Notes under the pieces: model-generated | The model's database searches: none | What the model saw: the letters and a program-made list of their open reading frames with translations, nothing else | What the model was told of the DNA's origin: nothing | Position numbers and translations under genes: made by a program | Assembly (NCBI RefSeq): GCF_032191835.1 | Contig: NC_083237.1 | Location: 40,176,001 to 40,240,000 of the forward strand | Reading direction: 5' to 3' | Origin: Heteronotia binoei | Lineage: Eukaryota | Length of the DNA: 64,000 nt | Shown here: positions 12,901 through 36,584 of the stretch, in pieces | How the letters are laid out: every line of letters begins with the position of its first letter | Position numbering within the stretch: position 1 is the stretch's first letter

Positions 12901-13968
12901 TGAGGCAGCTTATACTGGCCATCTGGACCTATCCTGAGATTCTTCCTAAATCATTCCTATGGGCTTTTACCTAATATTTTAACATTCTAACATGAAATTT
13001 AAAATTCATAATGTGCCACTAAATATTTTCTTGATGACCAGTCAGTGCTGACTTGATTTAACTCTGCTTTGGTGAAGTTATTCCCACAACAATTGATTAT
13101 TATACGATTCCATTATTATTATTGGAAACAAGCTATCTAGAGGATTGTCAAACTTTTTTGTATTTCAACACCTGAGTACATACTGCATTATGAATGTGCC
13201 AGATGTAAATATGTAACTGGAGCACTAAAACAAGAAAGCATGTTTTATGTTTATATGCTACTCAAGTGTTAAGTAACTGACTCAAAGAGTCATAACTAAC
13301 CCTGTAACAGTTTATTTTTTTTCAAAGACTTCCATTCTATTAGGAAAGAAGTAACTGGGCTTTGCTGTTGTTGTTTTTATTTCCACAGCAATGGAGAACC
13401 GAACTGAAGTGCATGAATTCATTCTCCTGGGTCTTACACATGAACACAGAGAGCAGTACACTTTCTTTGTGATGTTTCTTCTTCTCTACCGGGCCAGTTT
13501 GCTGGGGAATGGAGCCATTGCCCCCCCAGGCAGAATAACGAGACAAACACCGGATTGGATTAAAGGGCCACTTTATTAAACTTAACGGCAAGGGCAAAAC
13601 ATGGGGACAGATCAAGCCAGGGGTCAACCCGACCACCTCCTTGACCTGAAACTGGGCGAGCCCCCAGAGCCCCGGGTATGAGCCAACCCAACGGCTCAGA
13701 CCCAGCCGGCGCGGCAACATGATCACCGCTCACCTGAGCTCCGCCATCCCCACAGCCGTGCAGCCTGGGATGCGGACACTCTCCGCGTGCCGGGATCCCA
13801 TAGACTCCCTGGAGCCAACCTTGGGCCGTACAGCTTAACGGTCCCCCAGGGAAGCCATGCACCAAAATGGCGCGATGCTACGGGAGCTCACCAATCCCCA
13901 AAACATAATCCCAACCACAAACTGCCACGGACAGCGCCAAGCCTCTGCTTAGGCCGCTGTACCCCAAA

Positions 13969-14545
13969 CTATAACACCCGAACAAGCCCTTGCCGTAAGT
14001 CGGCTAAAAATAGCTCATTGCCCTTCTCTGACAGATGGACCCCATCCTCTCTGTACAATTCCGGCATATTAGATTGAATAAAAGGATGGGGCATGTAACC
14101 TCCGAGACCACCACAGAGGGATTTGTGCAAAGCCCTGTTGGCTTTTATCCTGGCGCGCTCCAAACCAGCTGGGTCCCAACTGGTCCGCCAAACGCGGCGC
14201 GGCAGCATGGCCGACCATATGATAAGGACACCAGGCCACCTATTGCCGATCAAAGCCAGATCCGACTGAGCCTGAATCGAAAGGGCCTTCCCCTTCATCA
14301 GACCCAAGTCGTTCTCCCCCAAATGTATTACCAAAATCTGTGGAGGAGGGCCACCCCGGTCCCTGAACAAAAGGGGGAGGAGTCCAGGCCACCTCATACC
14401 ACGGCGGCCCTGCCATGTAATTACAGCTCTGTCGCTCAGGCCCAGCTGCAAACCGGTCGGCGTCCGTCGGGCCTGATGTGCCGCCCAAACACAATGCTGT
14501 GGCCGCATATAAGGATCCGTTTCCTCTCGTCGCCAGCCACAGCAC
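13969..14545 (-). CDS. SGNH/GDSL-like hydrolase (esterase) exon of the YR element; one 1-bp deletion
   Basis: Blocks RILICGHS, LVIHLGENDLG and DGVHLSEKGN. It is preceded by a polypyrimidine tract and AG at 14561-14546. Confidence 0.85.
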
Positions 14546-14638
14546 CTAGAAGAAAAAACTATTAGAACTGCTGAACTAGGGATGAATAACATAACCAGCC
14601 TCAAACATTCCCCGTGGTATCGGTGTAGGAAGACCATC

Positions 14639-15539
14639 CTAAGACCGCAAAGGCCGAATATAAGCACGGTAAGCCCCAGACTTCCAACGCCCCAGTTGAC
14701 GAATGTCCTCTCCTCCATAGCCCAACGCTGCGGCTGTGGAAGCTGCACCGATTCTGAAGGAATGGGTACCAAATTTGCGACCCCCGAGGCCCAAATGTTT
14801 CAAAGCTCTACTCGTGATGGCTCAAAATTGGTACTTCGTCAAAGGTGCCTCATTGACATGGCGGAAAAAGGGGCCGTCCAATGATCCACGCCATTCAATG
14901 TAATGCTTGATTGCAGCCACTGGGCATAACTTACGCTCCGCACAAGTTCCGACCGTCATTGTGCAGCCGTGTCTTTGAACGGCGGACCCGGAACGCCACC
15001 CGGTCGCTGAATAAACTAACATCTTTAAACTGCAGGCCCCTTGCAGAAACATCATTGCGGGAGAGTGTTACCAGCTCCGGTACTCTAAAGGCCCCAAAAA
15101 AGGCCGTCAATGCGGCACCGTGGAAGAGTGCCTCCTCATAAGCTGACCCACAAACAAGAGCCCAAGAGGCATGAAGCCCCCTGAGGATAGATGGCGAGAT
15201 AGGTTGCCTACCATCAACCCGGGGTCCAGATTCACGGGACCAACCTTCCAGCATTTTTTGTATGCAAAAATCCTTAGTCGCATCGCCATGCCCTCTGGCG
15301 TTGCTCGTAAAAGCCAGTGCCGCCAGCTGGCCCCGAATAGATTTCACTGAAAGACCCCTTTGCTTCTGATGCACACAAAACTGTAACAACTGCTCAACAG
15401 GAATGGGCCACACCTCAGGTAATCCTGCCCCCTTTCTGAAAACCAAAAACTGGCTAGCCGCCCGGTCATACGACCTTTGAGTGCTGGGCGCTATGGCAAG
15501 ATGGATTGCCCGGCTCACTTCTTCCCTCCAATCTGCCAT
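14639..15539 (-). pseudogene. Tyrosine recombinase of the YR element (frameshift plus nonsense codon)
   Basis: MADWREEV…AFFGAFRVPEL…RRSKT, then in another frame LCPVAA…F*AITSRAL…GTHSFRIGAAS…GRWKSGAYRAYIR, giving the R…HxxR…W…Y catalytic set. Confidence 0.9.
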
Positions 15540-15582
15540 AATTCCGCCGGGATGCGCTCGGGCAACAGGTCGGCCTCCGGGG

Positions 15583-17312
15583 CTAATTGACGGAAACGGT
15601 CCATCTGTTGGCGAGACAGAGCATCCGCCACCCATTACAAGTGCCAGGAATGTGCTTAGCCAAAAACAAGATATTCAGTTTTAAACAGCATAACGTAAAC
15701 GCCCCAACAAGCCGCATGTCCGTGGGGGACTTGGATGTCAAACTGTTAACAACATGAACAACAGCCATGTTGTCGCACCAGAAGTGCACTGAGCAATTGG
15801 CCAAAGCCTCACCCCAAAGAAAAATGGCAATGACAATCGGAAAGAATTCAAGGAACGTAAAGTTCTGGCACAACTCGGAACCCAACCAATCCTGCGGCCA
15901 TCGCTCAGCACACCAGTGCCCCCGGAAATAGACCCCGAAACCAATGGAACCGGTGGCATCTGAAACTATCTGTAACTCGGCCTCAAGCTGCATATCCGCA
16001 CCCCAGAAAGAAATGCCGTTGAAGTCCTTTAAGAATGTTTCCCAGACCGCAAGGTCCTCTTGCATCTCCCTCGTAACACGGGTAAAATGATGCGGCAAGC
16101 GCAGGTTGGCCATTCCGTCGCAGAATTGCCTCAAAAAGGCCCTGCCCAGAGCCACTACCTTACAAGTGAAGTTCAAATGACCCACCAGCTGCTGTAGCTC
16201 CAATAAGGTGACCTTACGCTTAACCAACACCGCTCGGACCTGTGTTAACAGGCTAACTGGCTTGTCCTTGGGCAGCCTTGAAAACTGACGCACCGTATCC
16301 AACTCGATGCCCAAAAAGGTAAGAACCGTAGTTGGGCCCTCGGTTTTTTCCGCAGCCAACGGTACTCCCAATTCCTCAGTTAAATCCACGAAGGCCGTTA
16401 ACAACGAAAGGCACTGCCCGGAACCCGCGGGGCCCACGAAAAGGAAATCATCTAAATACTGAGCCGTGTCCTGTATCCCCATTCTAAAATGCAATGCCCA
16501 TTCCAAAAAAGTGCTAAAACGCTCAAACGCGGCGTAGGAAACTGAACACCCCATAGGCAGTGCCCTATCAACATAATAACTCCCTTCGAAAGCACAACCT
16601 AACAATTCAAAGTCCCCGGGGTGAACTGGGAGAAGGCGAAAAGCCGATTTTATATCGCACTTCGCCAACTCAGCACCCCTCCCACACCGGCGAACTATCT
16701 GTACTGGTCAAAAGAAGTAAATTTCACCGAACAAAGCTCAGCCGGGATTGCATCATTCACAGATCGACCCCTGGGATAAGAAAGATGGTGAATTAACCGA
16801 TATTCACCTGCTGCCTTCTTAGGAACCACTCCCAAGGGGGATACCCTCAAGTTCGGTAGAGGGGGGGACTTAAACGGGCCTAATACCCTACCTTCAACAC
16901 ACTCTTTTCTGATCTTCTCCCTCATGATGCGCTCAAAACCCTTAACCGAACGCAAATTAGCGGAAAAGAACGGGGTCCGGGGACCTTGATATGGGATTCT
17001 GAAACCAAATAAGAACCCCTCGAACAGGTAATGCGCGTCGTTCGAATGAGGATAAACATGTAACAACTGCCTAAGAACCCTCAGCCGAATGGGGCTGGGA
17101 CCCTTTTGAAGGGTGCTGCTGAGGCCCGCCGCCTGTCCGCTTATTAGGCCACCTTTGTTTGGACCTGGTACAGGCAGTGAAGGCGTGAGGGCCTCCACAA
17201 ATCGGGAACTCGTGCTTATACTTACAGGCCTTCCTGGCGCACGAGCCTTGGGAGGTGAACTCCCAGCAAAGCAGCCGTGGCTGAACCGACTACCCCGCGG
17301 CTGCGCGGGCAC
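15583..17312 (-). pseudogene. DIRS/Ngaro-type reverse transcriptase and RNase H (frameshifted)
   Basis: SPLGVVPKK…YRLIHHLSYP, KCDIKSAFRLLP, LPMGCS, YLDDFL, FLGIELD, SDATGSIGFG, LEFFPI and FWCDNMAVV. There are frame breaks near 16700 and 15625. Confidence 0.9.
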
Positions 17313-18580
17313 CAGTAAAATTTGTTGTCAATGTCTTTTGAATCAAATGGCCGCTATCAGATCGCTTCCCTGCATTTGGTTTTGCGGGCGCCATAAGCTG
17401 CAGCCAAAGCTGCTGGTTAATCTGATTCCACTGGAGACAAGGATTAACTGCCACCCGCATACGGAACTGTTTGTCGTACTGGAGCCACGCCCCACCAGCA
17501 AAGTCATTATATGCCCTGTATATAATGTCGCAGTACTGGAACAACGGTGCTGCTCTCCATGGTTGGGCCCTAGCGATAACGCCCGCATAAATGAGGAAAC
17601 CGGGCAGCCAATTTGCCCATGTTCTATCTACTTTCCAACGCTTGAGCTTCTCTGTCTTTTTCGTCAAGCTCGTCCTTTGATTTCTTTTCCAATTGCCTAT
17701 ACAGAAGGCTAAATACATCTACATATTCACCTTTAAGGATTTTCTCCCTAGTCGCGGCGGTAAGATGGTCGCCTAAGGGCATGGCAGGGTCCCCAAAAGG
17801 CAAAGCATGAAATTCCAATGCACTGTAAGGAACTGGTGGATGGGATGGGAACCCCCAGAAACCCACCTGCTGCGCAGCCCACGGTAAAGACGTGGACGGG
17901 GACTGCTGCCATCCCCAAGGTAACACACCCGTCGCCAGCCCCTGACCACCGGCCCCGAGGCCGGCTCCATAACCACTGCTCCCTGGGGCTAGACCCCAAG
18001 GTACCCAAGAACTTTCAGAAACTGGAGTCGAAGATGAAGTACCAGCCTGTGACAGGAAACCCGGGGCTGCCTGCTGCCCCATAAGTGGCACCGCCCCCAA
18101 ATAGTTGGCCCCTACCGCCTGGGTTCCTCCCACCGGCCTGGAACCCGATGCTACATTGGGCCCCCAAGGGCCCCATGGCCATGCCACTCCCTGCTGCGGT
18201 GCAGGTAACTTACCTTCGCTCACCGGCGGCACCACCACCACAGCCTCGGGTTCCTCCCTCTGTTCGTCCTCTAGCGGCACTCCCTCGTTCGTCACACCAC
18301 TGTTTCCTTCTGCTCCCTGCAACACAGAAAGCCGGGCCAGCACCTCCTTCTGAAAGGAGATGGTGGCTGCCCTACCTGACCCTAAAAGATTTGTGACCCT
18401 CCTAGAAGGGCCAGCCACTCCCCTTGCCTCCTCCAAGGCTGCCAATTGGTCCATAATGGCTTGCCTGGTTTGGGCCTCCTCCCCTTCCTCAGGCGGGGGA
18501 AGTTCTGGGGGCGGTGTTTTTGAAGGTCGCTTTGCGGGCTGCTTGCCCTTTTTGTTGCCTTGGCCCTTCTTAGGCCCCAT
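17290..18580 (-). pseudogene. Gag-like ORF1 of the YR element (one frameshift near 17660)
   Basis: MGPKK start, PLGDHL…REKILKGEYVDVFSLL and WLQYDKQFRMR, followed by a region overlapping the pol ORF. It is homologous to 34034-34950. Confidence 0.8.
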
Positions 18581-19528
18581 TTTTTTATATACTATACGCC
18601 TTATGAGCCCCACCCTGGGCGGATCAGTAAGGTATGCATGTGGGTTTTACGGGGGGGGGGGGGGTACCACAAAGCGCCACCCTCCACTAACCTTTCAATA
18701 AGGGCACCTACACCAGCCAAGGCTAAGTCCAGGCCTCTGTCTCAACCCCCCACGACCCCTTCAACAGGCTCGCCGGCCTGCCCCCTTCTATCTGGCCTGA
18801 CAAAGGTCCTAAGGAACAGTAATGGGGTGGGTGTGGGGTTTGATGCCTAAATGAAATAAAAAATGCTCCTCAGGGACCCACACTGCCTCCCCGCCGCAAC
18901 CGCCGCGGCCTTCGTGGGGTGTCTTCCTCCACCCACAACCCTTCCCTACACGGCCCGCCAGCCTGCCCCTTTCAATCTGGCATGCCCAAGGCCTTAAGGA
19001 GCCAGGAGGGGAGGGGGGAGAGAAGGGCTGAATCAGTCGAAAGGCCCAGAAAGTCCTCGCGGCCTCACAAAACACAACCTCCAAGGCCCGTCCTCGTGGC
19101 CGGCTACACAAACCGCCTGCGCCCAAAAAGACGCCTGCAGCCGCCCCAGCTGCAAATACAGCCTCACAAAGCTTCTCTCACAATGACGCCCGGGCTGCCG
19201 ACGGCCGAAAGCCGTAATGCGTCCTCAAAGCCGATGCCGACGACGCCTCCCGGCTCAGAGGTTCCCGTGACGCTTCGCTCTCCCAGGCCCGCAGTCAGCT
19301 CCGGTAAGGTGCGACTGACCAGGCCGAGAGCAAAATCAAACTGTGTATGAGGGGGTGGGAGTGGCCTCTTAAGGCCGCTCCTTGCCCCCTCCCCCATGGG
19401 ACAAGACCATTGCCTCGCATCCACGCGGGGAGGCAATGGGCGGCCCCCAGCCTCAGCGGTCGATGGACCGCCCGGCTGGGAAGGGGCCGAATTCTGACTG
19501 TAGCTATAGCTGAGCCTCGACTCCATAC

Positions 19529-19924
19529 TGTCGGTGCGGGAGTTAGCAGAGTGAGCTTGGTGACCTGCCCGACACAGGGCTCCAGGAAAGAAATCAGCCA
19601 GACACCTGCAACTAGTGCCAAAATAGTGTATTTACAGAAATATACAATAAGTGCTCACTAGTGCAGTCCAATATCTTACTCCAACAGACAAAGTGCTCCG
19701 CCTACACACCAACTCTCAGAGAGAGCTGTGTGGTCCACACACAGTCTTCTTATAGTTCTACCAGCCAATCCTGGCTGGGCACTGTCATGCTGACTCAGCA
19801 GGTTTCTTCTCTTGGCTTCTGCCGGCCTGCTGATAAGGTCATTGTGACCTAGCATGCCTGCTAGATCACCAGCTGTCAAAGCATAGCTGTCAGACTGGGT
19901 TTACATAGATTCATTACACCAACA
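19529..19924 (-). repeat. Copia 3' LTR (396 bp)
   Basis: Direct repeat of 22855-23263. Confidence 0.95.
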
Positions 19925-19940
19925 CACCTCCTAATCTATT
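19925..19940 (-). other. Polypurine tract
   Basis: Minus strand AATAGATTAGGAGGTG abuts the 3' LTR. Confidence 0.75.
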
Positions 19941-20024
19941 GAACCCAGTACACCCAACCACTGTACACAGTTTTCATGTTCACTTGCAGTCAGTAACATA
20001 CATTTCATATTTACACATTTGTAA

Positions 20025-22676
20025 TTACCAGTCCAGGCACTCGTCTTGGTGATAAAAAATATCATCACTGTCCTGGTCAGCCAGCTCCTTCTGGCGTTTG
20101 GCTTCAGCCTCCCTGTTCTTTGCCTCGCACTCTGCCACCCAGGCCTTCCACTTCTTAGCCTTTTCTTTCAGCATTCCTCCAAACCCAGGTGGGTCTGGTT
20201 TAACTGTCAGAGTGACATAGGGCACCTTATACCTGGCAGGAGGTTTGCCTTTTGTGGTTCTAGCAGACACCCATGGCTCTGTGCTAGGACCGGCCTTATC
20301 TTCTTCAGGCTGATCTGTTCCCACCTCCTGGGCTGGTTGTTCTGCCCCTGTGGTTAGAGGTTGCACCTCCTGACTTTCACACTCCACCTCCTGACCCTCT
20401 ATCTCAGGCTCTGAACCACCTTGGAGCTCACGTTTCTCTGAGCCTCTGCTTGCCAGTTCCCGGTCGGGAGAATGTTCCTGCTTAATTACCTCTGGCAGGA
20501 CTCCAGCACCGTTATCAGTTGCTGGCAGCAGTACAAATTGTTTCTTCGGGGAGTGTAATCTTGCCCAGCTGGACTCCTCATTAAACTGGGCAGTTTCACT
20601 AAGGATTATTTTCTTTCTCTTATCGCAGAAGCGATAACACCTGGCTTCTGGCTTGTAGCCCAGAAAAGTCAGGCTCTCTGCCCGGACATCCCCCTCCCTG
20701 CTGCTCTCGGAGGGGACGCCAACCCGAGCCTGTGTCCCAAAGACTCTCAAAAATTTTAAATCTGGACACTTGTTATACAGCTTCCTATAGGGCAAATCAT
20801 TTACAGGTTTACACCAAACACGATTATGCACAAACACAGCACAGTACATAGCCTCAGCCCAATTGCAAATTGGCAACCTTGCATCTTCAAGCATGCTGTA
20901 CATTATCGTTTGCAACACAGCTCCTGTGCGCTCTGCTAGCCCATATTCTTTCCCATTTTCTTGGGGCGTGGCTGGGTTCACTAAACGGTGGGCAATGCCC
21001 TTGTTCTCCAGCCAACATTTCAATTCATTTGATAAGAATTCCCCCCCTCTGTCGGTCTGAATAGCCAGGAGGTTTACACCTAATTGCCTCTCAACTGCTT
21101 TGACCCATTTTATGAATGTCTTGTACACTGCAGATTTCTGTACCATAGCAAAGACCCAAGAGTACCTCGTGTGGTCGTCTGTGGCCACTAAGCAGTACCT
21201 CCTCCCCGACAGACTTTTTGGCAATGGGCCAATCACGTCTAAGTGAACTAGCTCTAGGGCACGCTCACTTTCTCTCGTGCTCTCCTTAGAAACAGCGCAT
21301 GCCCTGCTTTTGGTCTTCTTGCAGACCTGACAATTCAAGTAACATTTGCAAGGTTTCACTTTTAGACTAGGCACCAACTCCAGGGTTTTTTTCAACGCTC
21401 TAAACCCGCAGTGCCCCAGTCTCTGGTGAAGTAAATGTATACACTTATTGTGCACAGGCTCATTTGACACCTGTGCCACCTGGGCACATTCATTCTGGAC
21501 CACATATATTTTACCTTCTCTTTTTCCAGTTACAAGCAACTTTCCCCCACCTCCCAGGATTTTACAGCAGGTCCTTTCAAACCTCACCCGGTATCCCTGG
21601 TCAATTAGCGTGCTAACACTTAGCAGGTTTGACTGTAGTGAGGGTACACATAACACATTTTGCAAAGTGCAATTTAACACAGGAAATTTCACATTGCCTG
21701 AGCAAGTAGCATTGGCAGTGGTCCCGTTAGCTAATCTAACATGCCTGTGTTCAGGAATGTCAATATTGTTCAACAACTCCTTCTTGCAGCAGAGATGGCT
21801 CGTTGCCCCAGAGTCTAAAATCCAGGCAGACCCTGTGCTCTCTACTGCAGACGTGACCAGCCGGGCTCCTTCCTCACACGGGCTGGTGGTCCTCCGCTCT
21901 CGCTGCCTCCATCCACACCGCTTCCCCCTCTCTGGGCAAGCTCGAAGCAGGTGCTGTGACGACCCACAGCCATAGCAGCGTCGGACTGCCATTGCAGTCG
22001 GCTCCTCTTTCTCAGCCTTTGGACGTTTGCCAGCAGCAAAAGCTGGCTCACTCTTGGCTGTCTTCCCGGACGAGCCGATAGCCGCACGCTCCTGGGCCGA
22101 CACCCCCGGACAGCTCACTGCCGCAATCCTCTCTTGGAAATCAAGCAGGTGGGCACAGACGTACTCCATCGTCAGGGTCGCTACGTCCACTGTCTCCAGG
22201 GAAGTTATCAAGGGAGTAAACTCAGGCGGCAACGATGACAGTAAAATGTAAACGCGGTCATCGGGAGCTACAGTCTTGCCTCTGGCCTCAAGCTCAACGA
22301 AACAGTCCGTTAGCTTCTTGATGTGGTCTTTCACACACCCTCCAGCTGGCATAACGGTGCGAAACATTTTCCTAGTCAAGGCCATGAGGGAGCCAGCAGT
22401 GGTACTAACATGAACCCCACTGAGCGCGTCCCAGGCAGCCTTGGGAGTGTCCTTCCCATGCACATATACTAGCTGGTCATCTCCTATAGCCAGCACGATG
22501 TTTGCCAGTGCCTTATCGGCTAACACGGTCTGGGCAGGAGATAACGCTGCAGGGGGATTACTCACAAACAGCCATTGCCCTTCATGCTTGAGGTAGTGTT
22601 GCATTCTCAGGCTCCACACCGCGTAGTTGGCTGAGTTGAGCTTCTCAACGGGCACTGCAAGCTGCTGCTGAGCCAT
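20025..22676 (-). CDS. Copia Gag-protease-integrase polyprotein (883 aa), no RT
   Basis: KLNSANYAVW (copia Gag N-terminus), CCHC knuckle CYGCGSSQHLLRAC, protease WILDSGATSH, HHCC zinc motif, and integrase HLDVIGP…TDRGGEF…AER. No RT YVDD or RNase H catalytic motifs. Confidence 0.93.
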   Translation of the reverse strand: MAQQQLAVPVEKLNSANYAVWSLRMQHYLKHEGQWLFVSNPPAALSPAQTVLADKALANIVLAIGDDQLVYVHGKDTPKAAWDALSGVHVSTTAGSLMALTRKMFRTVMPAGGCVKDHIKKLTDCFVELEARGKTVAPDDRVYILLSSLPPEFTPLITSLETVDVATLTMEYVCAHLLDFQERIAAVSCPGVSAQERAAIGSSGKTAKSEPAFAAGKRPKAEKEEPTAMAVRRCYGCGSSQHLLRACPERGKRCGWRQRERRTTSPCEEGARLVTSAVESTGSAWILDSGATSHLCCKKELLNNIDIPEHRHVRLANGTTANATCSGNVKFPVLNCTLQNVLCVPSLQSNLLSVSTLIDQGYRVRFERTCCKILGGGGKLLVTGKREGKIYVVQNECAQVAQVSNEPVHNKCIHLLHQRLGHCGFRALKKTLELVPSLKVKPCKCYLNCQVCKKTKSRACAVSKESTRESERALELVHLDVIGPLPKSLSGRRYCLVATDDHTRYSWVFAMVQKSAVYKTFIKWVKAVERQLGVNLLAIQTDRGGEFLSNELKCWLENKGIAHRLVNPATPQENGKEYGLAERTGAVLQTIMYSMLEDARLPICNWAEAMYCAVFVHNRVWCKPVNDLPYRKLYNKCPDLKFLRVFGTQARVGVPSESSREGDVRAESLTFLGYKPEARCYRFCDKRKKIILSETAQFNEESSWARLHSPKKQFVLLPATDNGAGVLPEVIKQEHSPDRELASRGSEKRELQGGSEPEIEGQEVECESQEVQPLTTGAEQPAQEVGTDQPEEDKAGPSTEPWVSARTTKGKPPARYKVPYVTLTVKPDPPGFGGMLKEKAKKWKAWVAECEAKNREAEAKRQKELADQDSDDIFYHQDECLDW

Positions 22677-22840
22677 GATGCCAACTCCTCCACACAGCTG
22701 GCTGCCGTCGTCCCTCTGGCTCTCAAAATGAGATAGCTGGTGCTGCTTTGTCTTTCAACCGGCGTTCCTCGCCTCCGGCTCTTTCCAAACTCTCGGTCAG
22801 CTCAACTCTCACGGTGCTCCTCCGCGCAGCGGAACCGCCC

Positions 22841-22854
22841 TGGACCCATAACCC
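22841..22854 (-). other. Primer-binding site, copia-type (internal tRNA-iMet fragment)
   Basis: Minus strand GGGTTATGGGTCCA directly after the 5' LTR resembles the canonical copia PBS GGTTATGGGCCCAG. Confidence 0.8.
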
Positions 22855-23263
22855 TGTCGGTGCGGGAGTTAGCAGAGTGAGCTTGGTGACCTGCCCGACA
22901 CAGGGCTCCAGGAAAGAAATCAGCCAGACACCTGCAACTAGTGCCAAAATAGTGTATTTACAGATATATACAATAAGTGCTCACTAGTGCAGTCCAATAT
23001 CTTATTCCAACAGACAAAGTGCTCCGCCCTACACACCAGCTCTCAGAGAGAGACCTGTGTGGTCCACACACAGTCTTCTTATAGTTCTACCAGCCAATCC
23101 TGGCTGGGCACTGTCATGCTGACTCAGCAGGTTTCTTCTCTTGGCTTCTGCCGGCTCAAACCGGCCTGCTGATAAGGTCATTGTGACCTAGCATGCCTGC
23201 TAGATCACCAGCTGTCAAAGCATAGCTGTCAGACTGGGTTTACATAGATTCATTACACCAACA
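22855..23263 (-). repeat. Copia 5' LTR (409 bp)
   Basis: Direct repeat of 19529-19924. Confidence 0.95.
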
Positions 23264-24530
23264 CATACCCCCATGTATTTTTTTCTGGGCAATCTCTCCT
23301 GCCTAGACATGTGCTACTCCACTGTTACTGTGCCCAAAATGCTGAGTGGCTTCTTAACAGAACACCAAGCAATTTCTTTTATTGAATGTCTGGTTCAATT
23401 GCATTTTTTTTTACTTCCTGGGCAGTGGTGAAGGCATCCTTCTAGGGGTTATGGCCTTTGATCGCTACGTGGCTATCTGCAACCCTCTGCGCTACACAGT
23501 CATCATGAATAAATTGACTTGCCTTCTGTTAGCTGGGGCCACCTGGGTTGCTGGCTTTTTTCATGCCATGATGCATACTGTGGCAACCTCTCAGTTATGG
23601 TTCTGTGGCCCCAATCATGTTCAGCACTTCCTCTGTGATGTCAAACCTCTGTTAAAATTGGCCTGCAGTAACACCACCCTCAACCTCAGCCTCCTTAATA
23701 TTGTTACTGGCTGCATTGCTATGAGTGGCTTCTTCCTCACTTTTCTCTCCTACTTGTACATCATATCCTTCCTCTTCTTCAAAGTCCAGTCCTGGAAGAG
23801 TCGCTGGAAAGCCTTCTCTACTTGTGCCTCCCACCTGACTGTTGTGGCTCTTTTTTATGTTCCAGTTCTTTCCAACTACTTGCTTGCATCTGTTGGGGAG
23901 TCTGCTAAAAGAGAGATGATCATCACTATATTGTACAGTGCAGTCACTCCAGTTTTGAATCCTCTGATCTATACATTGAGAAATCAAGAGGTAAAATCTG
24001 CTCTGAAAAAAATATTCAGCCAGAAACATTTGTTTGGAAGGATATGAATTTTTTTTCTCATCCTATCTCCACATTTCTATCATGCTGGTAACTGACCAGC
24101 ACACATTCATTATCTAAAATAGGCATGTGTGATAACTGGTGGCCCTTGTTAAGTGATTTCTGAGCAAACTAAACTGGGCTGCAAACCATGATAATCAAAG
24201 TGAACAGGGTTATGCCTACCCCAATTTTGCTGGCCTTGATTTGCTCCCATATAAATTGGTTCCAAATTGTTGGGAATCCTGAAACATAGAGATAGTTTCA
24301 TTGTGATATGATGTGAATAAGGTTTGTGGAGTTACTCCATTGACTGCAACCCTGTGAAAATGTATCTAAGACTATCCCTTAATGTTCTCACTCCCACATT
24401 ATCTATATCTTTGTTAAAATCTAGCTGCCTTGATAGCCCAGCTTAACCTGAGCTCATCAGCGCTTGGAAGCTAAGCAAGGCTGGCTAAGTTAGTGCTGCT
24501 AAGAACACAGGAGTTGCTATACAAAAGAAG

Positions 24531-27639: not shown

Positions 27640-30600
27640 GGGTTGCAAATACAGTAGAAGACAGAAACAGGATACAGGATGACCTTGACAGGCAGGAAAA
27701 CTGGGCTAAAACCAACAAAATGAATTTTAACAGGGATCAATGTAAAGTTCTGCATTTCGGCAGGAAAATTCAATGCATGGTTATAGGATGGAGGAGACTT
27801 GTCTTAGCAGTAATAATAATAAAAATTTAATATTTTTTTTTATTTATATCCCGCCCTCCCCGCCGAGGCAGGCTCAGGGCGGCTCACAGGACATGGTGCA
27901 TACCATGATTACAATAAAATACAGTTTACAATAAAATACAGTTAAAATACAATTAAATTACAAATTCATAAATTGTTAAGTAAATAAATTAAAACCAGTA
28001 TAAATTGAAGGTGCTATAGTTCAATACATATATATATAAAGATGGCTAGATGTCATTACCAGGATTCCACTTTAAAAGCAAGTTGGAAGAGGACGGTTTT
28101 ATAAGCCCTGCGGAACTGATTGAGGTCCTGCAGGGCTCACACCTCCTCTGGCAGCTGATTCCACCATTGGGGAGCCATTATCGAGAAGGCCTGCTCCCTT
28201 GTTGTTTTAAGCTTGGCCTCCCTTGGTACAGGGATTTTTAGAAGATTTTGAGAACTAGATCTCAGTGCTCTCTGGGGAACATATGGAGAGAGGCGGTCCC
28301 TAAGGTAGGCAGGTCCTCGGCCATATAGGGCTTTAAAGGTAATAACCAGCACCTTGTAACAAACTCTGTACACAATTGGCAGCCAGTGCAGGTCCCGCAG
28401 CCTAGGCCGTACATGTTCCCACTGAGGTAGTCCCACTAACAGCCTGGCTGCTGCATTCTGCACTACTGCAGTTTCCGAGTTCGGTACAGGGGCAGCCCCA
28501 TGTAGAGGGCATTACAATAGTCCAACCTCGAGGTGACCGTTGCATGGATCACTGTTGCCAGGTCACTATGTTCCAGGAAGGGGGCCAACTGCCTCGCCCT
28601 CCTAAGATGGAAAAAGGCGGATTTAGCAGTGGCTGCTATCTCGGCCTCCATTGTCAAGGAAGGCTCCAGTAGCACTCCCAAGCTCCTGACCCTGCGCACT
28701 GGTATCAGTGACGCACCGTCAAAGGCTGGTAGGGAGATCTCCTCTCCCAGCCCGCCGTGACCTACGCAAAGGACCTCTGTCTTCGCTGGATTCAGCTTTA
28801 GCCCACTCAGCCTAAGCCAACCTGCCACGGCTTGCAACGCACGATCCAGGTTTATAGGGACATCATCAGTCCGGTCGCCCATCAATAGATAGAGCTGGGT
28901 GTCATCACCGTACTGATGGCAACCCAGCCCATGCTTCTGGGCAATCTGGGCAATGGGGCGCATGTAGATGTTAAACAACATCGGGGAGAGAACTGCCCCC
29001 TGAGGCACCCCACAATTAAGCAGGTGTCTCTGGGACAGCTCTCCTCCAATCGCCACCCTTTGTCCCTGACGCTCAAGGAAGGAGGAAAGCCACTGTAAGG
29101 CTAGCCCCCGAATTCCTGTGTCGGCGAGGCGGCGGGTCAGCAGCCAATGGTTGACCATATCGAACGCAGCCGATAGGTCTAACAACAGCAGTACCACTGA
29201 GCCGCCTCAATCCAGATGTCGCCGGAGGTCATCCATGAGGGCGACCAACATTGTCTCCATCCCATGGCCCGGGCAGAAGCCGGACTGGTATGGATCTAAG
29301 GTGGAAGCATCATCCAGGAAACCCTGTAACTGCAACGCCACAGCCCTCTCTATAATTTTGCCCCAAAAGGGCAAATTTGAGACCGGCCGGTAGTGTGCCA
29401 ATTTGACAGGATCTGATATAACCTTTTTCAGGAGAGGGCGGACCACTGCCTCTTTCAGGGATGTTGGAAAAGAGCCCTCCGAAACAGATCTATTTATGAT
29501 GTCCTGTATAAGACATCTTAGCTCTTCCTGGCAAGCCTTAATTAGCCAGGAGGGGCATGGGTCCAGATCAAAAGTAGTTGGGCGTGCAGTGACAAGGATT
29601 CTGTCGACTTCCTCCAAGCTGAGTGGATTGAAACAGTCCAGGATCAAACCAGAAGACACACACGGGGCCTCGAGTTCACTTATTGTATCCAATATGGCAG
29701 GGCAGTCGTGGCGGAGCGACTGGACCTTGTCTGCAAAAAATTTCGCAAAAGCCTCACAGCCTATCTCCAATTCCTTAACATTTGGCTTGCCTTTTGGCAA
29801 TGTAGTAAAATTCTGAATTATCCTAAACAATTATGCCGGGCGTGAATTTGCAGATGCAATCTTAGCTGCAAAGTATGTTTTCTTTGTGGCCTTGACTGCC
29901 ATCTCATAGGACCTCATAAACTCCCTATAAGATGTTCTGGTCACTTCGTCACGTGTACGCCACCTTTGCCTCTCTAGCCGTCTGAGACCTTGTTTCAGCT
30001 GGCGTAGCTCTGGGGTGTACCACGGAGCCAGCCTAATCCGAGGTCATAGAGGGTGTCGAGGTGCAATCTCATCAATGGCCCTAGAGAGCCGGCTATTCCA
30101 GGCCATTGAGAGAATCGCCAGAGGGCCAGGGATCCCGCAGAGCCGTTTGGAACCGTTCTGGGTCCATCTGGCTCCGTGGGCGAGCCATAATAAGCTTGTC
30201 GCCTAAACAGATTTGGGGTGGCATATCTACACAAGCCCTAAGGGCGAGGTGGTCTGACCATGGCATCGCTTCGGCAGTTATATCGTCCACCGTAACCCCG
30301 GCTGCAAAGATCAAGTCTAACATGTGCCTGGCCTGGTGAGTGGGGGCTATGACAAATTGAGAGAGTCCTAGCATCACCATGGATGACACTAGGTCTGTCG
30401 CCTGACTAGAGGTCACGTCATCAGCATGGACGTTGAAGTCACCCAGGATTACCAGCCTTGGATGCTCCAACGCCCAGCCTGTCGCCGCCTCAAGTAGGGA
30501 CGGTAAGGCGCTGGCTGGTGCAGTAGGAGTACGGTACACCAGCCAGATTGCCAACCCCTCAGTAGTATGTGTGAAAAGGATCTAGGGGTCTTAGTGGATC

Positions 30601-30815
30601 AAATGCTGAACATGAGTCAACAGTGTGATGTGGTGGCTAAAAAGGCAAACACAATTTTGAGCTGTATCAACAGAAGTATAGCGTCCAGATCACGTGAAGT
30701 GATGGTATCACTTTACTCTGCTCTGGTAAGACCTCACTTGGAGTACTGTGTTCAGTTTTGGGCACCACATTTTAAGAAGGATATAAACAAGCTGGTCCAG
30801 AGGAGGGCGACAAAG
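27640..30815 (+). mobile_element. CR1 LINE RT fragment (about 27640-27810 and 30563-30815) split by an L2 insertion
   Basis: DDLDRQENWAKTNKMNFN…CKVLHFG continues as [10 protein letters not shown]…[16 protein letters not shown] short TSD-like cagta sits on both sides of the L2. Confidence 0.85.
27811..30562 (-). mobile_element. L2-clade LINE, 5'-truncated (APE C-terminus plus RT), frameshifted
   Basis: LGDFNVH…PTH…LDLIF…SDH, DLSAAFD, GVPQGAVLSPMLF, YGDDTQLY and SRLDYCNALY. The 3' end is gcgggatataaataaaa. Confidence 0.9.
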
Positions 30816-32221
30816 AAGGGAAGGAAGAGGCAGCAGGGCAGCTACTTTGACAAGCTACACCTCTTAAAGAAAGCATTTGCTATCTGCTGTTGACCCCCTG
30901 TAGGATTAGCTAATAATAGCTTGGTAATGAATAATTTGAACTGACCATCATTAGCATGATGGTGGGATTCAGCCTGGGAAGGAGAGATCTTGGTGCTGAG
31001 CAGTATCTTTTCAAACCTGATAATGGCTTCTCTAGTGGGAGAATGGAGTTTGGCACCTTATAGCGCATTGTATGCTGGCAAGGATAAGCAAGCCCTCTGG
31101 TTAAGTTTGGAGCCAAGGTGGATGTCAGGCTCTGTTCATCTATGATACTAATAAAAGCTGTTACTAATCATATTCACTACTGCATAGAAATGCCTACTAA
31201 CATAGAAGCCGGGGTAGCAAAGAGGGAGGGGGGAAGAGTAGAGAACTTCCCAGGAATATCAAAGGTTGCCAAGATCTCCTTGAAGTAGACAGTATGTGCC
31301 AGATTCTCACCCCCTCTCCGGAGGCCCCAAGGACATTGCCTCCGGGAAATGTAACCACCAACTGAAGAGATAAGGGGGGGGGGGGAAGCATTGGGAAAAG
31401 TCTCACATGCAAAGCAGCCTTTTGTTGCCCCCCAAGTCGGAATAAAGAGACGGACACAATTAGATTGGTGAAACTATGGGCCACTTTTATTAAAATAACC
31501 AGCAACGGCAAGGGCAACTGAACTGCGGCCAGGTCAGGGCCAGGGGTCTCCTCAGACCACTCCCCTGCCTTTTTCAGCGGGTGAGAGACCCGGCCCCCCA
31601 GCCGGAGCTGTGAGCCACAGCTCCTATTAGGCAGGCCCAGCAAGGAGGCTCGCACCGGAGGGCCCAAACACCAGACGCGAGTCTCAGTGAAAGGCACCCA
31701 TCCAATCGAGTCTCCAGGACAGTCTGCATTCACATACCTCGGTCCACACTAAAGGTTGATCCTGCCAGACCCCTAACTCCCCAAAAGGGGGAGGCTAACC
31801 GGTCCTCCCCAGGCCGCATGGTGCCATAAACCCCGTAAAATGTGCCACAACTAAGGCCAAGTCTCTACTTAGGGCTTAGCACCCACAGAAAGGCCCAAAG
31901 CCAACACAAGCCCTTGCCATAAATCCCTCAGGAAAAGCATATTACCCTTTTCTGAGAGATGCACACCATCCCCTCTGTAGAGGTCGGGGCATTCCTTAGA
32001 AATATCTGGATGGGGCAAATAGTGGCCCAAACCACCCTCCGAAACCTTGAAAAATCTCCTTATTCGCTCTATAACGAGCCCTTTCTAATCCAGCTGGATT
32101 CCAAGCACTGCGCCACACCAAGCGCGGAATCATGGCCGACCAAACTATAATGGTACCAGGCCATCTGTTCCTTATGTACTTGAAATCATCTCAGGCCTGC
32201 AAGATCAAAGCCTTGCCTTTA

Positions 32222-33103
32222 GTAAGTATGTAAGTAAGTAAAATTTTATTTGTATCCCGCCCTCCCCCGCTGAAGCAGGCTCAGGGCGGCTAACAACATT
32301 TAAAAGTGAACAATACAATAATAAGACATTAAAATCACATTAAAACCAATCAATAATTAATTAAAACATTTCTAAATCTAATACTATTAAGTCTGGCAGT
32401 AAACATTATTGTTTGACGCTATGTCTGTCAGATGGCGTAGTGGTGGTGGATCCCTAGACCAGACCATTTTGGTGTTTCCTTTGTTGTGCACCCATAATTC
32501 AGTCATTGACAAACGCCTGTTTAAAGAGGGTAGTCTTGCAGGCCCTGCGGAACTGGTCTAAGTTCCGTAGGGCCCATACTTCCTCTGGGAGCTGATTCCA
32601 GAGGTGTGGGGCCATGGCGGAAAAGGCCCGAGTGCGGGTGTTTTGAAGTTTAACTTCTTTTGGCCCAGGGATAGTCAGTCTGTTTTTTCCTACTGACCTC
32701 AGTGCTCTCTGGGGCTCATATGGGGAGAGACGGTTCCTCAGGTAAGTCGGTCCTTGGCCATATAGGGCTTTAAAGGTAATGACCAGCACTTTGTACTGGA
32801 TCCGGTATACAATCGGCAGCCAGTGCAGTCCGCGCAGCCCCTGCCGTATATGCTCCCATCTTGGGAGACCAAGTAGCAGCCTGGCCGCCGCATTCTGCAC
32901 TAGCTGTAACTTCCGGGTCCGGCACAGAGGCAGCCCCATGTAGAGAGCGTTACAGTAGTCCAGTCTTGAGGTGACCATCGCATGGATCACCATTGCTAGG
33001 TCCTGACGCTCTAGGAAAGGAGCCAACTGCCTCGCCCGCCTCAGATGGAAAAATGCTGACTTGGCAGTGGCTGTTATCTGGGCCTCCATTGATAGTGAAG
33101 GCT
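32222..33103 (-). mobile_element. L2 LINE 3' fragment inserted in the SGNH region of the YR element
   Basis: SRLDYCNALYMGLP…HWLPIVYRIQYK, with the same 3' end family as 27811-30562. Confidence 0.88.
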
Positions 33104-34990
33104 ATCACTAATCAGCCCGAGATCATTCCCTCCCAGGTGAACAATTAATACTTGCGGAGGAGGGCCCAAACACCCATGAAATAAGAAAAGGGGGGGGACA
33201 AGCCAGGCCACTGAAGACCCCTGCTCCCCCGCCATTCAACCGTAACATATTTGCTGAGCCCCAGCTGAGAGCCAACAGCAGTTCTCCGAGCTTGACTGTG
33301 CCCGCAGATGAGAACTCTGCTCCTCCGGCCAGGAACAACAGCATCTAAAAGGAAAAACATACAAGTTATAAAACCCAAACTTAAACTACCCCCCCCCCCC
33401 CCGCTCCTAATAACAACTCCCAGTGGAGCAAAGGGGCAAACAGCACTTTTGTAAGCCTGAGATCGCCAACGGCCAAGGCTGAATGGACGAAGTAGGATAA
33501 CCCAGGGCAGCAGCCGTAGAGGCCGCACCGATTCTAAGAAATGGATACAAAACCTCACTCCAAATAACCCCGAAATTGATGTCTTGCCAGAGGGCCACCC
33601 TCAAAATGGCAGAACAACAACCTTTCGCAACCTCAGAGCTACCTTACCCCCTGATAACTTAACATCCCTACCTGAAACTAAAACTTTTAACAAATATAAA
33701 CTGTCCCCCTTATGTGGGTACCTGCGAAGGCATTCCTCAAGAGGACCCACCTTCATCGGGCTGAGGCCCTTCTCCAGATTGAGAAGGGCCCCTCCCCTAA
33801 TCCTTTCTGACCCTTGCGTGCCAGACTCTCGGGCAGTTGTTGAAAGAGTGTGGGCCGGCGCACAGGGGGCATTCGTGCTTGAACTGGCAAGCTTTAGGAC
33901 TGCACGCCCCCTGGGCCCCAAACTCCCAGCAGAGCAAGCGGTGCTGAACTGCCTGCCCTGCAGCGCTGCGGGAGGATACTGAAGCACTGGAAGGAGAAGA
34001 GGAATCCTTGGTTACAAGGTGACCACTGTCGGATCAATCCCCCAAATTGGGCCAAGCAGGTGACATCGCCTGCAGCCACAACTGCTGGTGAATCTGATCC
34101 CAAGGGAGTGAAGGGTACAAAGCGGCCCTCATCCTGAACTCCTGGTCATATTGGATCCAGGCCGGGCCGCTGAACATCGTATACCCCTTGTATATGATGT
34201 CCATATACTGAATCAACTCTGTGTCACACAGTGGCCAAAACACCCAAATGCCATCAAGAGGTCCAGCTCCTCCTTGTCCTTTTTCTCCAATTCCCTAAAT
34301 AAGATTCCCTTTTAAGATTTTCTCCCTCGTGGCAGGCAGCAGGTGATCACCCAGCGGCAAAGCCACTTCCCCAAAAGCCATAGCACTAAAGGGGACCGCC
34401 CCGTACGGAGATGGGCAACCCCAGCCTCCAGGCCAAGCCGCTGCTGACCCCTGCTGCCCCACCCCGGGCCAATTACCAAACGGACCGAACTGACCCTGTG
34501 GCCATGTCCAGTTGCTCAGCTGCTCTAAACCTAGAACAGAAGGAGCCCCAGCACCGCCTAACGGAGCACCCGCCCCACTAGGACCAGCAGACCCCCAAGT
34601 CCCCCAAGGCCATACAGGCCCAGAATGAGGCAAAGAGCCGTCCCCCGACTTACCAGAAGGTAAAGCAGGCACCAAAGCTGATCTGGTACCGCCCGCACCG
34701 GACAACAGGCCCACTCCAACATCAGAGCCAGCGGGCCCCACAGCTCCTCCAGCAGCAACCGCAGCAGATCTGCCCTCCAAAAGAGGTAAGCGGGTCATTA
34801 TATCTGCCTGCAAAGCACGCTTAGACAACCGCCCCTTCTTGGGCAACTGAGAAGGTGGAAACCCCGATGCCTGCTCAAGTGCCCGCAGCCTCTGAAAAAT
34901 GGCTGCATTAACTTCATCATCCCCTTCCTCTTCCGACGAAGGGGGAGCAGAGGCTTAGATGGAGGCTTAGGAGCCTTAGGGGCAGGCTGT

Positions 34991-35433
34991 TTCTCTTTTG
35001 ACTTTCCACTGGCTGTGACAAGCATAATTGAACTCCAAACGGAGTTCTGGCCATCACATTTAAAGGGACGGCACCCCTTTTGAATGCCTTCCTTCCATAT
35101 GAAATAATGAAGGATAGGGGCGCCTTTTTGGGGCTCATAGAATTGGACCCGCTGATCCAATCTTTTTGAAACTTGGGGGGTATTTTGGGGAGAGGCACTA
35201 GATGCTATACTGAAAATTTGGTGCCTCTACCCCAAAAAACAGCCCCCCCAGAGCCCCAGATACCCACGGATCAATTCTCCGTGATTTTCTATGGGAATAA
35301 ATCTCCCTAGGGAATAATAGAGTTCCCACCAGACATTTCCCTCCCCTCCCCCCGCTTTCTGATGACCCTGAAGCGCGGGGAGGGTCTCCAAACTGGGGGA
35401 TCCCCTGCCTCCACCTGGGGATTAGCAACCCTA
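34991..35433 (+). mobile_element. hAT MITE fragment (TAGGGTTGCCA family), left end missing
   Basis: Collinear with 47915-48330; ends in ttagcaacccta. Confidence 0.75.
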
Positions 35434-36059
35434 TATTTTCCAACCCAGACTGGGCAACTCTACCTCTGGGCTTGGCTTGCCGGAGTCAAACATTTTGCCC
35501 TTTCTGCTAGCAAGGCAATGGAGAGGCAATCACTACCCAATTATTTTTAGAGTGTTTTACACATGGCTGCAAATCACTGAGCAGGGAGTAAAACTGCAGC
35601 CACGATCCTTTCTCACCCCTCTCGTGGTGGCCGGCCAGCTCTCTTACCGTTTTGTAGATAATTCTCCCCAGGCCCTGTGAATTTATCTGCATGGTCACTC
35701 AGCAGAACTAACAGCAAATGAATTCCAATTTCCCCTCTGAAGAGAAGCTCTCGCCCTTAAAAATTATTGCATTTTGTAAAAGGCTTGTATCCACACCAAG
35801 CCAAAACCCTCAGAAGGCTTAAAAACACAATGAGGAAGGGGTGCAAAAAACAACTGCCAGTCCTGGGAGAGAGGGACACAGCAGTCCACACCACACAGGG
35901 CTCCGCCAGAACATCAACGGTGCCCGACCCGCACAATTCCATCGGCGGCGCAAGACAGACCGGTGCACCCCAAAGTCGCGCAGCATGCCGGGGTCTGTCG
36001 TCCCCACTGGCGCCCAAACCGCAGAGTGACAGGGGCCTGGTGGGACGAGGGAGAGGAGA

Positions 36060-36440
36060 CCCTCCGCCGCTCTCCCCAGGCAGCCTGCAGCGGTGGCGGC
36101 AGCAGCGGCGGCCTGTGCCGCGGCCGCTCTCCTCAGGCAGCCCGTAGCACTGGTGGCGGCCGCTCTCCTTAGGCAGCCCGTAGTGGCGGCAGCAGTGGCC
36201 TGTGCCTGTGCCACGGCCGCTCTCTTCAGGTAGCCTGTAGTGGCGGCAGCAGTGATGGTGGCCGCTCTCCTCAGGCAGCCTGCAGCGGCGGCTGCTCTCC
36301 TTAGCCTGTAGTGGCGGCAGCGGCCGCTCTCCTCAGGCAGCCTGTAGCAGCGGTGGCGGCAGCGGCAGCAGCCACTCTCCTCAGGCAGCCTGCAGCGGCC
36401 TGTGCCTGTGCCTGTGCCAGCGGCACCGGCCGCTCTGGTG
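36060..36440. repeat. GC-rich minisatellite with 8 copies of the core GGCCGCTCTCCTCAGGCAGCCTG(T/C)AG
   Basis: Cores near 36066, 36122, 36158, 36215, 36260, 36290, 36322 and 36370, separated by variable GCG/GCA-rich spacers. Confidence 0.85.
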
Positions 36441-36584
36441 CCACCGTGGCAGCGGAGGGCACCGTGAGGGGGAAGCACCATCCCTCCCCCACTTCCAGAT
36501 TTTTGGAGAGCGGGGGAGGAGGCTGCCAACCTGGAGGTCCCCCGCCAGGGCAGGAGGGTTGGGAAGCCTACCCAAGAGCAAGGG

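What the first reader, a model, noticed from the sequence alone, without database searches (positions are those of the whole stretch)
19529..23263. A recently inserted copia element with no RT: open Gag-PR-IN ORF and eroded RT/RNase H stubs point to an old, trans-mobilised lineage
Seen: perfect 5-bp TSD, LTRs with only 3 substitutions and 3 indels, PBS, PPT and an uninterrupted 883-codon ORF, but the RT/RH region is absent. Near the ORF end, KPDPPGFGGMLKEKAKKWKAWVAECEAK resembles a degenerate pre-RT EPxSxxEA…W..AM.EE motif. DDIFYHQDECLDW resembles the RNase H terminal HIDIRYHF.RE motif, and an out-of-frame EHENCVQWLGV resembles the final RH helix. Inference: both stubs are heavily diverged and fused in frame while the insertion is young, so the deletion long predates this insertion. 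The element would then spread as a semi-autonomous family that supplies Gag, PR and IN and borrows RT. Known non-autonomous LTR classes (TRIM, LARD, TR-GAG, BARE-2) have other coding contents.
Basis: partly seen in the sequence, partly recalled or inferred. Interest (0 to 1): 0.8.

Follow-up and report, generated by a model that had tools for sequence, protein, structure and literature searches.

The report
Gecko copia element lacking reverse transcriptase
A young jumping gene of the copia type, sitting inside a gecko smell-receptor gene, still encodes its coat protein, protease and integrase. It has lost its reverse transcriptase, so it most likely spreads by borrowing that enzyme from a full-length relative.

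Summary
On the minus strand at 19529-23263 lies a complete LTR element. Its LTRs (396 and 409 bp) differ by 3 substitutions and 3 indels. A neighbouring intact receptor paralogue shows the empty site with a single CATAC, which confirms the 5-bp duplication. The element has a tRNAiMet-half primer site, a polypurine tract and one 883-codon Gag-protease-integrase ORF with all catalytic motifs. No RT or RNase H is detectable anywhere in the window.

The ORF does run into the first residues of the RT domain, so the 5' stub is real. The two claimed RNase H stubs are not better than chance.

The scan found this before on other DNA. Unchecked notes from other windows of this genome (a gecko, probably Heteronotia binoei) describe at least five more RT-less copies of 3718-3721 bp and a 5130-bp intact copia. 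RNA-library contigs 88-99% alike cover the whole element. Their indels avoid the ORF and their substitutions are enriched for synonymous changes.

My reading is a multi-copy, RT/RNase H-deleted copia lineage mobilised in trans. That the lineage is old, and that its own ORF is under selection, is only partly supported. I could not read the partner's sequence. This is a new variant of a known kind, of moderate interest.

The parts
19524..19528 (.). Target-site duplication CATAC, left copy
   Evidence: The intact paralogue at 5608-6549 has this pentamer once.
19529..19924 (-). 3' LTR (396 bp, TG...CA)
   Evidence: Alignment of the two LTRs shows 3 substitutions and 3 indels. Self-BLAST agrees.
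19925..19937 (-). Polypurine tract (AGATTAGGAGGTG) next to the 3' LTR
   Evidence: The Podarcis relative L002 has the same AGGAGG..GTG + TGTTGG arrangement.
19934..19993 (-). Out-of-frame stretch (...EHENCVQWLGVLGSID, then a stop next to the PPT). Possibly the ancestral pol C-terminus, not significant.
   Evidence: Profile alignment scores -1.8 bits and 23% of shuffles reach it. The only support is position, by comparison with L002.
20025..22676 (-). Single 883-codon ORF encoding Gag, protease and integrase, followed by a linker, a pre-RT stub and a 32-residue charged tail
   Evidence: The CCHC, DSG, HHCC and D,D,E motifs are all present.
22128..22520 (-). Copia-type Gag domain (PF14223, residues 53-183). 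The CCHC knuckle lies at 21936-21977.
   Evidence: (E=9e-22).
21591..21824 (-). Aspartic protease barrel (PF22936, residues 285-362, active site DSGATSH)
   Evidence: (E=7e-19).
20565..21488 (-). Integrase: zinc-binding HHCC region (397-456), rve core (472-571) and SH3-like domain (634-704). A 4-residue insertion sits just before the catalytic Glu.
20124..20297 (-). End of the IN-RT linker and the first residues of the RT domain (residues 794-851, '...KKWKAWVAE'). This is the 5' stub; the breakpoint lies after about residue 847-861.
   Evidence: E=0.004.
20028..20123 (-). Charged C-terminal tail (residues 852-883) of unknown origin, downstream of the breakpoint
   Evidence: No similarity to RT or RNase H of relatives. 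Also present in a 97%-identical RNA-library contig at 19851-20118.
22824..22854 (-). Primer-binding site, complementary to the 5' half and anticodon arm of initiator tRNA-Met (GGGTTATGGG...TTCCGCTGCGC)
   Evidence: A 36-bp match (86%) to the PBS of L002 is one of only two DNA matches between the two elements. The tRNA sequence itself is from my memory.
22855..23263 (-). 5' LTR (409 bp)
23264..23268 (.). Target-site duplication CATAC, right copy
23264..24047 (+). Downstream part of the disrupted olfactory-receptor gene (PMYFFL... to the end). The upstream pieces lie at 13391-13519 and about 19498-19528.

Best explanation
This is one copy of a multi-copy Ty1/copia lineage in a gecko genome that has lost RT and RNase H. 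It keeps every cis signal needed for replication: LTRs, a long PBS complementary to the 5' half of tRNAiMet, and a PPT. It also keeps an apparently functional Gag-protease-integrase polyprotein. The polymerase is missing from just after the first residues of the RT domain to near the 3' end of pol.

Inferred mechanism: its RNA is packaged into particles that also contain Gag-Pol from a co-resident full-length copia, probably the 5.13-kb element noted elsewhere in this genome. That element's RT/RNase H copies the RNA. The cDNA is then integrated, giving the 5-bp duplication seen here. This happened recently, inside an olfactory-receptor paralogue.

Shown: the anatomy, the absence of RT/RH, the 5' breakpoint, the recent insertion, and related sequence in RNA libraries with constraint on the ORF.

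Inferred: mobilisation in trans, the identity of the RT donor, and whether the element's own Gag, PR and IN contribute.
For: - Anatomy and youth.
- Empty-site proof from the paralogue.
- No RT/RH in the window.
- The ORF runs into the RVT_2 N-terminus and then departs.
- All catalytic motifs of Gag, PR and IN are intact.
- The closest RT-bearing relative is a 4.6-kb copia of Podarcis lilfordi (L002). It has the same PBS type, PPT and LTR start, which shows the ancestral layout.
- In two RNA libraries of one study, 195 and 131 contigs at 88-99% identity tile the element and almost nothing tiles the flanks. One contig covers the tail through to the 3' LTR and another covers the 5' stub.
- 13 of 27 listed ORF differences are synonymous (P about 0.004-0.03). 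Only a compensating pair of 12 listed indels lies in the ORF (P=1.5e-4). The structural variants in the linker are multiples of three (-150 and +45 nt).
- Unchecked notes from other windows report at least 5 more RT-less copies of 3718-3721 bp and a 5130-bp intact copia.
Against: - I could not read any other copy, nor the 5.13-kb element. A shared junction, distinct TSDs and shared LTR/PBS with a partner all rest on unchecked first-reader notes.
- The RNA evidence consists of short Logan contigs from a coded organism that may not be this species. They cannot be assigned to RT-less or full-length copies, and they cannot prove transcription.
- The contig over the 5' stub ends at 20089. That is only 5-47 nt past the breakpoint, depending on where the breakpoint lies.
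- This copy's PBS has four internal mismatches to the relative's PBS.
- The integrase has a 4-residue insertion next to its catalytic Glu, which might impair it.
Confidence: 0.72

Rival explanations
1. Recurrent origin. Each 3.7-kb copy is made afresh from a spliced or otherwise processed RNA of the full-length 5.13-kb copia that lacks the RT-RH segment. The identical junction would then reflect processing sites, not descent from RT-less masters.
For: - Copia-type elements are known (my own knowledge) to use splicing to adjust Gag to Pol ratios.
- The size difference in the notes, 5130 minus about 3720, is about 1410 nt, a multiple of three.
- The copies are reported as uniformly young and uniform in length.
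Against: - No splice signals can be checked without the full-length sequence.
- A splice that removes only RT-RH and joins in frame to a tail is not a known copia product.
- Contigs 3-4% diverged already carry the tail and the 3' end. This fits a lineage, although diverged full-length masters could also give it.
Confidence: 0.1
2. Pure parasite. The RT-less family is a very recent deletion derivative that hitch-hikes on the full-length element. Its Gag-PR-IN ORF is open only because the copies are young and because RT-RH lies at the 3' end of pol. The ORF plays no part in the element's spread.
For: - In copia the gene order is Gag-PR-IN-RT-RH, so any 3' deletion leaves the upstream ORF intact without selection.
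- This copy and those in the notes are all described as very young.
- The constraint seen in the contigs could stem from full-length copies.
Against: - Contigs 5-12% diverged still avoid frameshifts. Linker variants are in frame.
- The tail and 3' end are present at 3% divergence.
- Neither point is decisive.
Confidence: 0.15
3. One-off deletion. A full-length copia inserted here and lost RT-RH afterwards at this locus.
For: Only that no second copy lies within this 64-kb window.
Against: - Several notes describe the same 3.72-kb RT-less structure at other places in the genome.
- RNA-library contigs carry the tail.
- The ORF continues in frame across the breakpoint.
Confidence: 0.03

Closest known systems
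Autonomous Ty1/copia LTR retrotransposons. The nearest found are a 4.6-kb element of Podarcis lilfordi (L002, GCA_947686815.1) and the metagenome-derived polyprotein P0022.
   Same: Copia Gag, CCHC knuckle, DSG protease, HHCC plus DDE integrase and SH3 domain in the same order. TG...CA LTRs. A PBS complementary to an internal or 5' part of tRNAiMet. A PPT followed by a TGTTGG LTR start. A 5-bp TSD.
   Different: RVT_2 and RNase H are absent. Protein identity is only 32-45%. A 32-residue charged tail replaces about 470 residues.
'Semi-autonomous' and non-autonomous plant LTR retrotransposons: RLG_Sabrina, RLG_Quinta with its partner RLG_Cereba, TR-GAG, BARE-2, LARD and TRIM.
   Same: An internally reduced element that keeps LTR termini, PBS and PPT. 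It is thought to be cross-mobilised by an autonomous partner while still supplying some protein (PMC11302176).
   Different: Those elements encode Gag only, or Gag plus an unknown domain, or nothing. BARE-2 keeps pol but lacks Gag (from memory). This element keeps Gag, protease and integrase and lacks only RT-RH. It is a copia in a vertebrate.
IAP I-delta-1 elements of the mouse
   Same: A deletion subtype with one fixed junction and an open fused ORF. It is non-autonomous, needs proteins in trans, and accounts for most new insertions. Its own fusion protein acts in cis (PMC6466679).
   Different: It is an endogenous retrovirus with gag-pro-pol order, and the deletion removes parts of gag and pol. 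Here only RT-RH is gone, and no cis effect has been shown.
Drosophila copia and yeast Ty5 priming
   Same: The PBS pairs with an internal or 5'-half part of initiator tRNA-Met rather than with its 3' end (from my own knowledge; the PBS reading is).
   Different: The host is a vertebrate and the PBS is much longer, about 31 nt. This copy has four internal mismatches.

Membership tests
Ty1/copia LTR retrotransposon | Copia-type Gag and a Gag-PR-IN order, with integrase upstream of the RT position | tested here: met
   Pfam PF14223, PF22936, PF13976, PF00665 and PF25597 in that order. The alignment to full-length copia polyproteins is collinear.
Ty1/copia LTR retrotransposon | RVT_2 reverse transcriptase and RNase H | tested here: not met
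   No Pfam hit and no tblastn hit in the window. Only the first 5-15 or so residues of the RT domain remain. It is therefore a derivative, not an autonomous member.
Ty1/copia LTR retrotransposon | LTRs with TG...CA ends, PBS, PPT and a 5-bp TSD | tested here: met
Non-autonomous or semi-autonomous LTR retrotransposon family (deletion derivative mobilised in trans) | Several copies with the same internal junction and independent TSDs | not testable with these tools
   The genome cannot be searched here. Unchecked notes list at least 5 copies of 3718-3721 bp. RNA-library contigs cover the tail and the stub.
Non-autonomous or semi-autonomous LTR retrotransposon family (deletion derivative mobilised in trans) | An autonomous partner with matching LTR termini, PBS and PPT | not testable with these tools
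Protein libraries hold nothing above 45% identity.
Non-autonomous or semi-autonomous LTR retrotransposon family (deletion derivative mobilised in trans) | Purifying selection on the retained ORF among RT-less copies | tested here: inconclusive
   Contig differences are 13 synonymous to 14 non-synonymous, and indels avoid the ORF. The contigs cannot be assigned to RT-less copies.
TRIM / LARD / TR-GAG / BARE-2 classes | No coding capacity (TRIM, LARD), gag only (TR-GAG), or pol without functional gag (BARE-2) | tested here: not met
   The 883-codon ORF has Gag, PR and IN. The class definitions are from my own knowledge and PMC11302176.

The most novel reading that the evidence does not exclude
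The RT-less form is a long-lived lineage of its own, not a short-lived by-product. Selection keeps its Gag, protease and integrase because they act preferentially on its own RNA or cDNA, while RT/RNase H is taken from a full-length copia. That would be a stable division of labour between two vertebrate retrotransposons, and a class of non-autonomous LTR element (Gag-PR-IN, no RT) not described so far.
Probability: 0.3. Interest if true: 0.65.

Novelty: new variant of a known kind. Interest (0 to 1): 0.5.

Why it matters
Non-autonomous LTR retrotransposons are well described in plants, and as deleted proviruses in mice. Those forms keep no proteins, Gag alone, or a fused remnant. A recently active vertebrate copia that keeps Gag, protease and integrase but has shed only the polymerase would be a natural test case. 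It would show which retrotransposon proteins act in cis and which can be borrowed. It would also show how a deletion derivative can outnumber its RT donor. Copia elements are rare and little studied in amniotes, so a young pair in a gecko would be useful for studying transposon dynamics. The insertion also shows ongoing knock-out of olfactory-receptor paralogues by transposons.

Tried and rejected
- Exact-protein look-up of the ORF: not on record.
- The word-indexed protein search found nothing above 28% identity and the exhaustive search nothing above 45%. No close RT-bearing partner could be fetched.
- Two exact-pattern scans of metagenome contigs, one with the tail and one with the LTR-PBS junction: no match.
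- Sequencing-run search: no DNA run is served. Only two RNA libraries hold parts of the element. Copy number and junction counts from reads were therefore impossible.
- RNase H stub tests gave nothing significant: a profile of 47 C-termini, shuffles, and Smith-Waterman against the Podarcis element.
- My own alternative was that 'KELAD...DIF' is a remnant of the conserved ADIFTK motif.
- TARE1 of tomato looked like a precedent by its title, but it concerns a TG-to-TA change in the LTR end.
- Literature searches for an RT-less Gag-PR-IN copia, or for copia in squamates, gave no direct precedent. Absence from this library is not proof of novelty; Repbase could not be consulted.
- Rejected: a DNA transposon with a retroviral-type integrase, because this element has direct LTRs, a PBS and a PPT. 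Also rejected: an assembly artefact, because of the clean TSD and the same structure noted elsewhere.
Full report
**What is there**

The element lies on the minus strand at 19529-23263.
- Its two LTRs are 19529-19924 (396 bp, the 3' LTR in element orientation) and 22855-23263 (409 bp, the 5' LTR). They begin with TG and end with CA. That is 0.76% substitution divergence.
- The element is flanked by CATAC on both sides.
- It sits inside an olfactory-receptor gene, at the LHT|PMYFFL motif. A 97-98% identical intact paralogue at 5608-6549 carries the same DNA with one CATAC. Removing the element and one CATAC restores the receptor frame. This is as good as an empty site, so the boundaries, the 5-bp duplication and the recent insertion are secure.
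- No other copy or solo LTR lies in the window.

**Coding content**

One ORF of 883 codons (20025-22676, minus strand) fills the interior.
- Pfam finds DUF4219 and copia Gag, the Pol beta-barrel protease, the pre-integrase zinc region, the rve core and the retroviral SH3-like domain. It finds no RVT_2 and no RNase H.
- tblastn with the RT-RH parts of two full-length relatives finds nothing in the whole window.
- Against eleven relatives the Gag CCHC knuckle, the protease DSG, the integrase HHCC and the D, D, E residues are all in place. The only oddity is a four-residue insertion three residues before the catalytic Glu.

**The stubs**

BLASTP alignments with full-length polyproteins are collinear from residue 3 to residues 843-861 of the ORF. 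They end in the 'KKW..A...E' that corresponds to the W..AM..E start of the RT domain. A profile built from 65 full-length relatives aligns ORF residues 794-847 to the pre-RT linker and this motif, with E=0.004 for that single comparison. The 5' stub is therefore real, and the breakpoint lies after about residue 847-861 (window about 20094-20136).

The 3' stubs fare badly.
- A profile of 47 copia C-termini does not align 'DDIFYHQDE' to the HID.RYH motif.
- That profile gives the out-of-frame '...VQWLGV' only -1.8 bits, and 23% of shuffles of the region score at least as well.
- The C-terminus of the nearest RT-bearing element gives chance-level scores in all three frames.
- One positional hint remains. 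In that frame a stop codon lies directly next to the PPT six residues after LGV. In the Podarcis element the stop lies next to the PPT five residues after LGL.

Because the whole family is very distant from everything in the libraries (best 45%), 'degenerate motifs' cannot be read as erosion.

**Cis signals and relatives**

The sequence after the 5' LTR (GGGTTATGGG...TTCCGCTGCGC) is the complement of the 5' half and anticodon arm of initiator tRNA-Met. The tRNA sequence is from my memory.

The tool-based support comes from the closest RT-bearing relative.
- It is a 4.6-kb copia with 265-bp LTRs in Podarcis lilfordi (L002).
- It has the same PBS, and that 36-bp stretch (86%) is one of only two DNA matches between the two elements.
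- The PPT and the TGTTGG start of the LTR are also shared.
- This copy's PBS differs from the relative's at four internal positions.

**Host**

The receptor genes are most similar to those of geckos. The window's own receptors sit on a contig of 68,086,271 bp, the same length as the contig of a Heteronotia binoei receptor. The genome is therefore a gecko's, most likely that species.

**Is it a family?**

I could not search the genome. The ORF is not in the protein collections, no DNA run is served, and metagenome scans were blank. Two kinds of indirect evidence exist.

First, other first-stage notes on this genome, which I did not check.
- They describe RT-less copia elements of 3718, 3719, 3720 and 3721 bp with open Gag-PR-IN ORFs at other places.
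- They describe a 2347-bp further-deleted form and a 5130-bp intact, very young copia.
- The size difference of about 1410 nt fits the missing RT-RH.

Second, two RNA libraries of one study (a coded organism) hold 195 and 131 contigs that match the element at 88-99% identity over its whole length, with almost nothing on the flanks.
- One contig (97% identical) runs from the 3' LTR through the 3' UTR and the tail (19851-20118).
- Another (96.4%) covers 20089-20449, which includes the 5' stub. The two overlap by 30 nt, as adjacent graph contigs do.
- Among the listed differences inside the ORF, 13 of 27 are synonymous, against 23-29% expected (P about 0.004-0.03).
- Of 12 listed indels only a compensating pair lies in the ORF, which makes up 71% of the element (P=1.5e-4).
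- Two structural variants in the IN-RT linker change the length by -150 and +45 nt, both multiples of three.

The family's ORF has therefore been kept open while it diverged by several percent. Short contigs cannot say whether those copies were RT-less or full-length.

**Reading**

The one-off-deletion rival is very unlikely. The best reading is a multi-copy copia lineage with RT and RNase H deleted, mobilised in trans by a co-resident full-length copia.

The stronger claims are possible but not shown. These are that the lineage is old and that its own Gag, protease and integrase are selected and used. RT-RH lies at the 3' end of copia pol, so a 3' deletion leaves the upstream ORF open without any selection, and all noted copies are young. 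A further rival is recurrent production from a processed RNA of the full-length element. It cannot be excluded without that element's sequence.

**Comparison with the known**

- Plant 'semi-autonomous' or non-autonomous elements keep Gag only or nothing (Sabrina, Quinta with its partner Cereba; PMC11302176).
- Mouse IAP I-delta-1 is the nearest functional parallel. It is a fixed-junction deletion subtype with an open fused ORF that needs proteins in trans yet makes most new insertions, helped in cis by its own protein (PMC6466679).
- I found no description of a Gag-PR-IN, RT-less copia in the literature library. Repbase could not be consulted.

I rate this a new variant of a known kind, of moderate interest.

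Noticed in passing
window 13391-13519, 19498-19528, 23264-24047 (compare 5608-6549): The disrupted olfactory-receptor gene is a very recent duplicate of the intact gene at 5608-6549 (97-98% protein identity). It has been hit twice, by a roughly 6-kb LINE (about 13520-19497, minus strand) and by the copia. A frameshift also seems to lie near 23406-23425.
   Followed up: partly
window 13969-18613 (minus strand): The LINE next to the copia has an RVT_1 ORF at 15583-16668. It also has an ORF at 13969-14772 with a weak GDSL-lipase/esterase hit (E=2.5e-5, below the Pfam cut-off). That ORF lies 3' of the RT rather than in ORF1, which would be an unusual position if it is real.
   Followed up: no
window 20940-20951 (ORF residues 576-579): A four-residue insertion (KEYG) sits three residues before the integrase catalytic Glu. 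It is absent from all 11 relatives aligned. Its effect on activity is unknown.
   Followed up: partly
window 22824-22854: This copy's PBS differs at four internal positions from the PBS of the Podarcis relative, and from tRNAiMet as I remember it. Another window's note reports a perfect 32-nt match in another copy. That many mismatches is odd for so young an insertion, because the PBS is partly recopied from the primer at each cycle.
   Followed up: partly
window 23153-23162: The 10-bp indel between the LTRs is flanked by the direct repeat CCGGC. This copy (3735 bp) is 14-17 bp longer than the 3718-3721-bp copies in the notes, so the extra bases may be private to this copy.
   Followed up: no
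window 19961-20064, 20336-20621: RNA-library contigs show variants. One skips 102 nt across the ORF stop (19962-20063). One replaces 186 nt of the IN-RT linker with 36 other letters. One has a 45-nt duplication near 20354-20393. Summed word depth is far higher over gag and the 5' UTR than over integrase, but contig depth cannot be read as expression.
   Followed up: no
window 28463-29197 and 30000-37000 (GC-rich): There is a second LINE-type RT (RVT_1, E=8e-24) and a long GC-rich block with many minus-strand ORFs. This olfactory-receptor cluster (genes at 5608, 39710, 49589 and 55887) is heavily invaded by retroelements.
   Followed up: no
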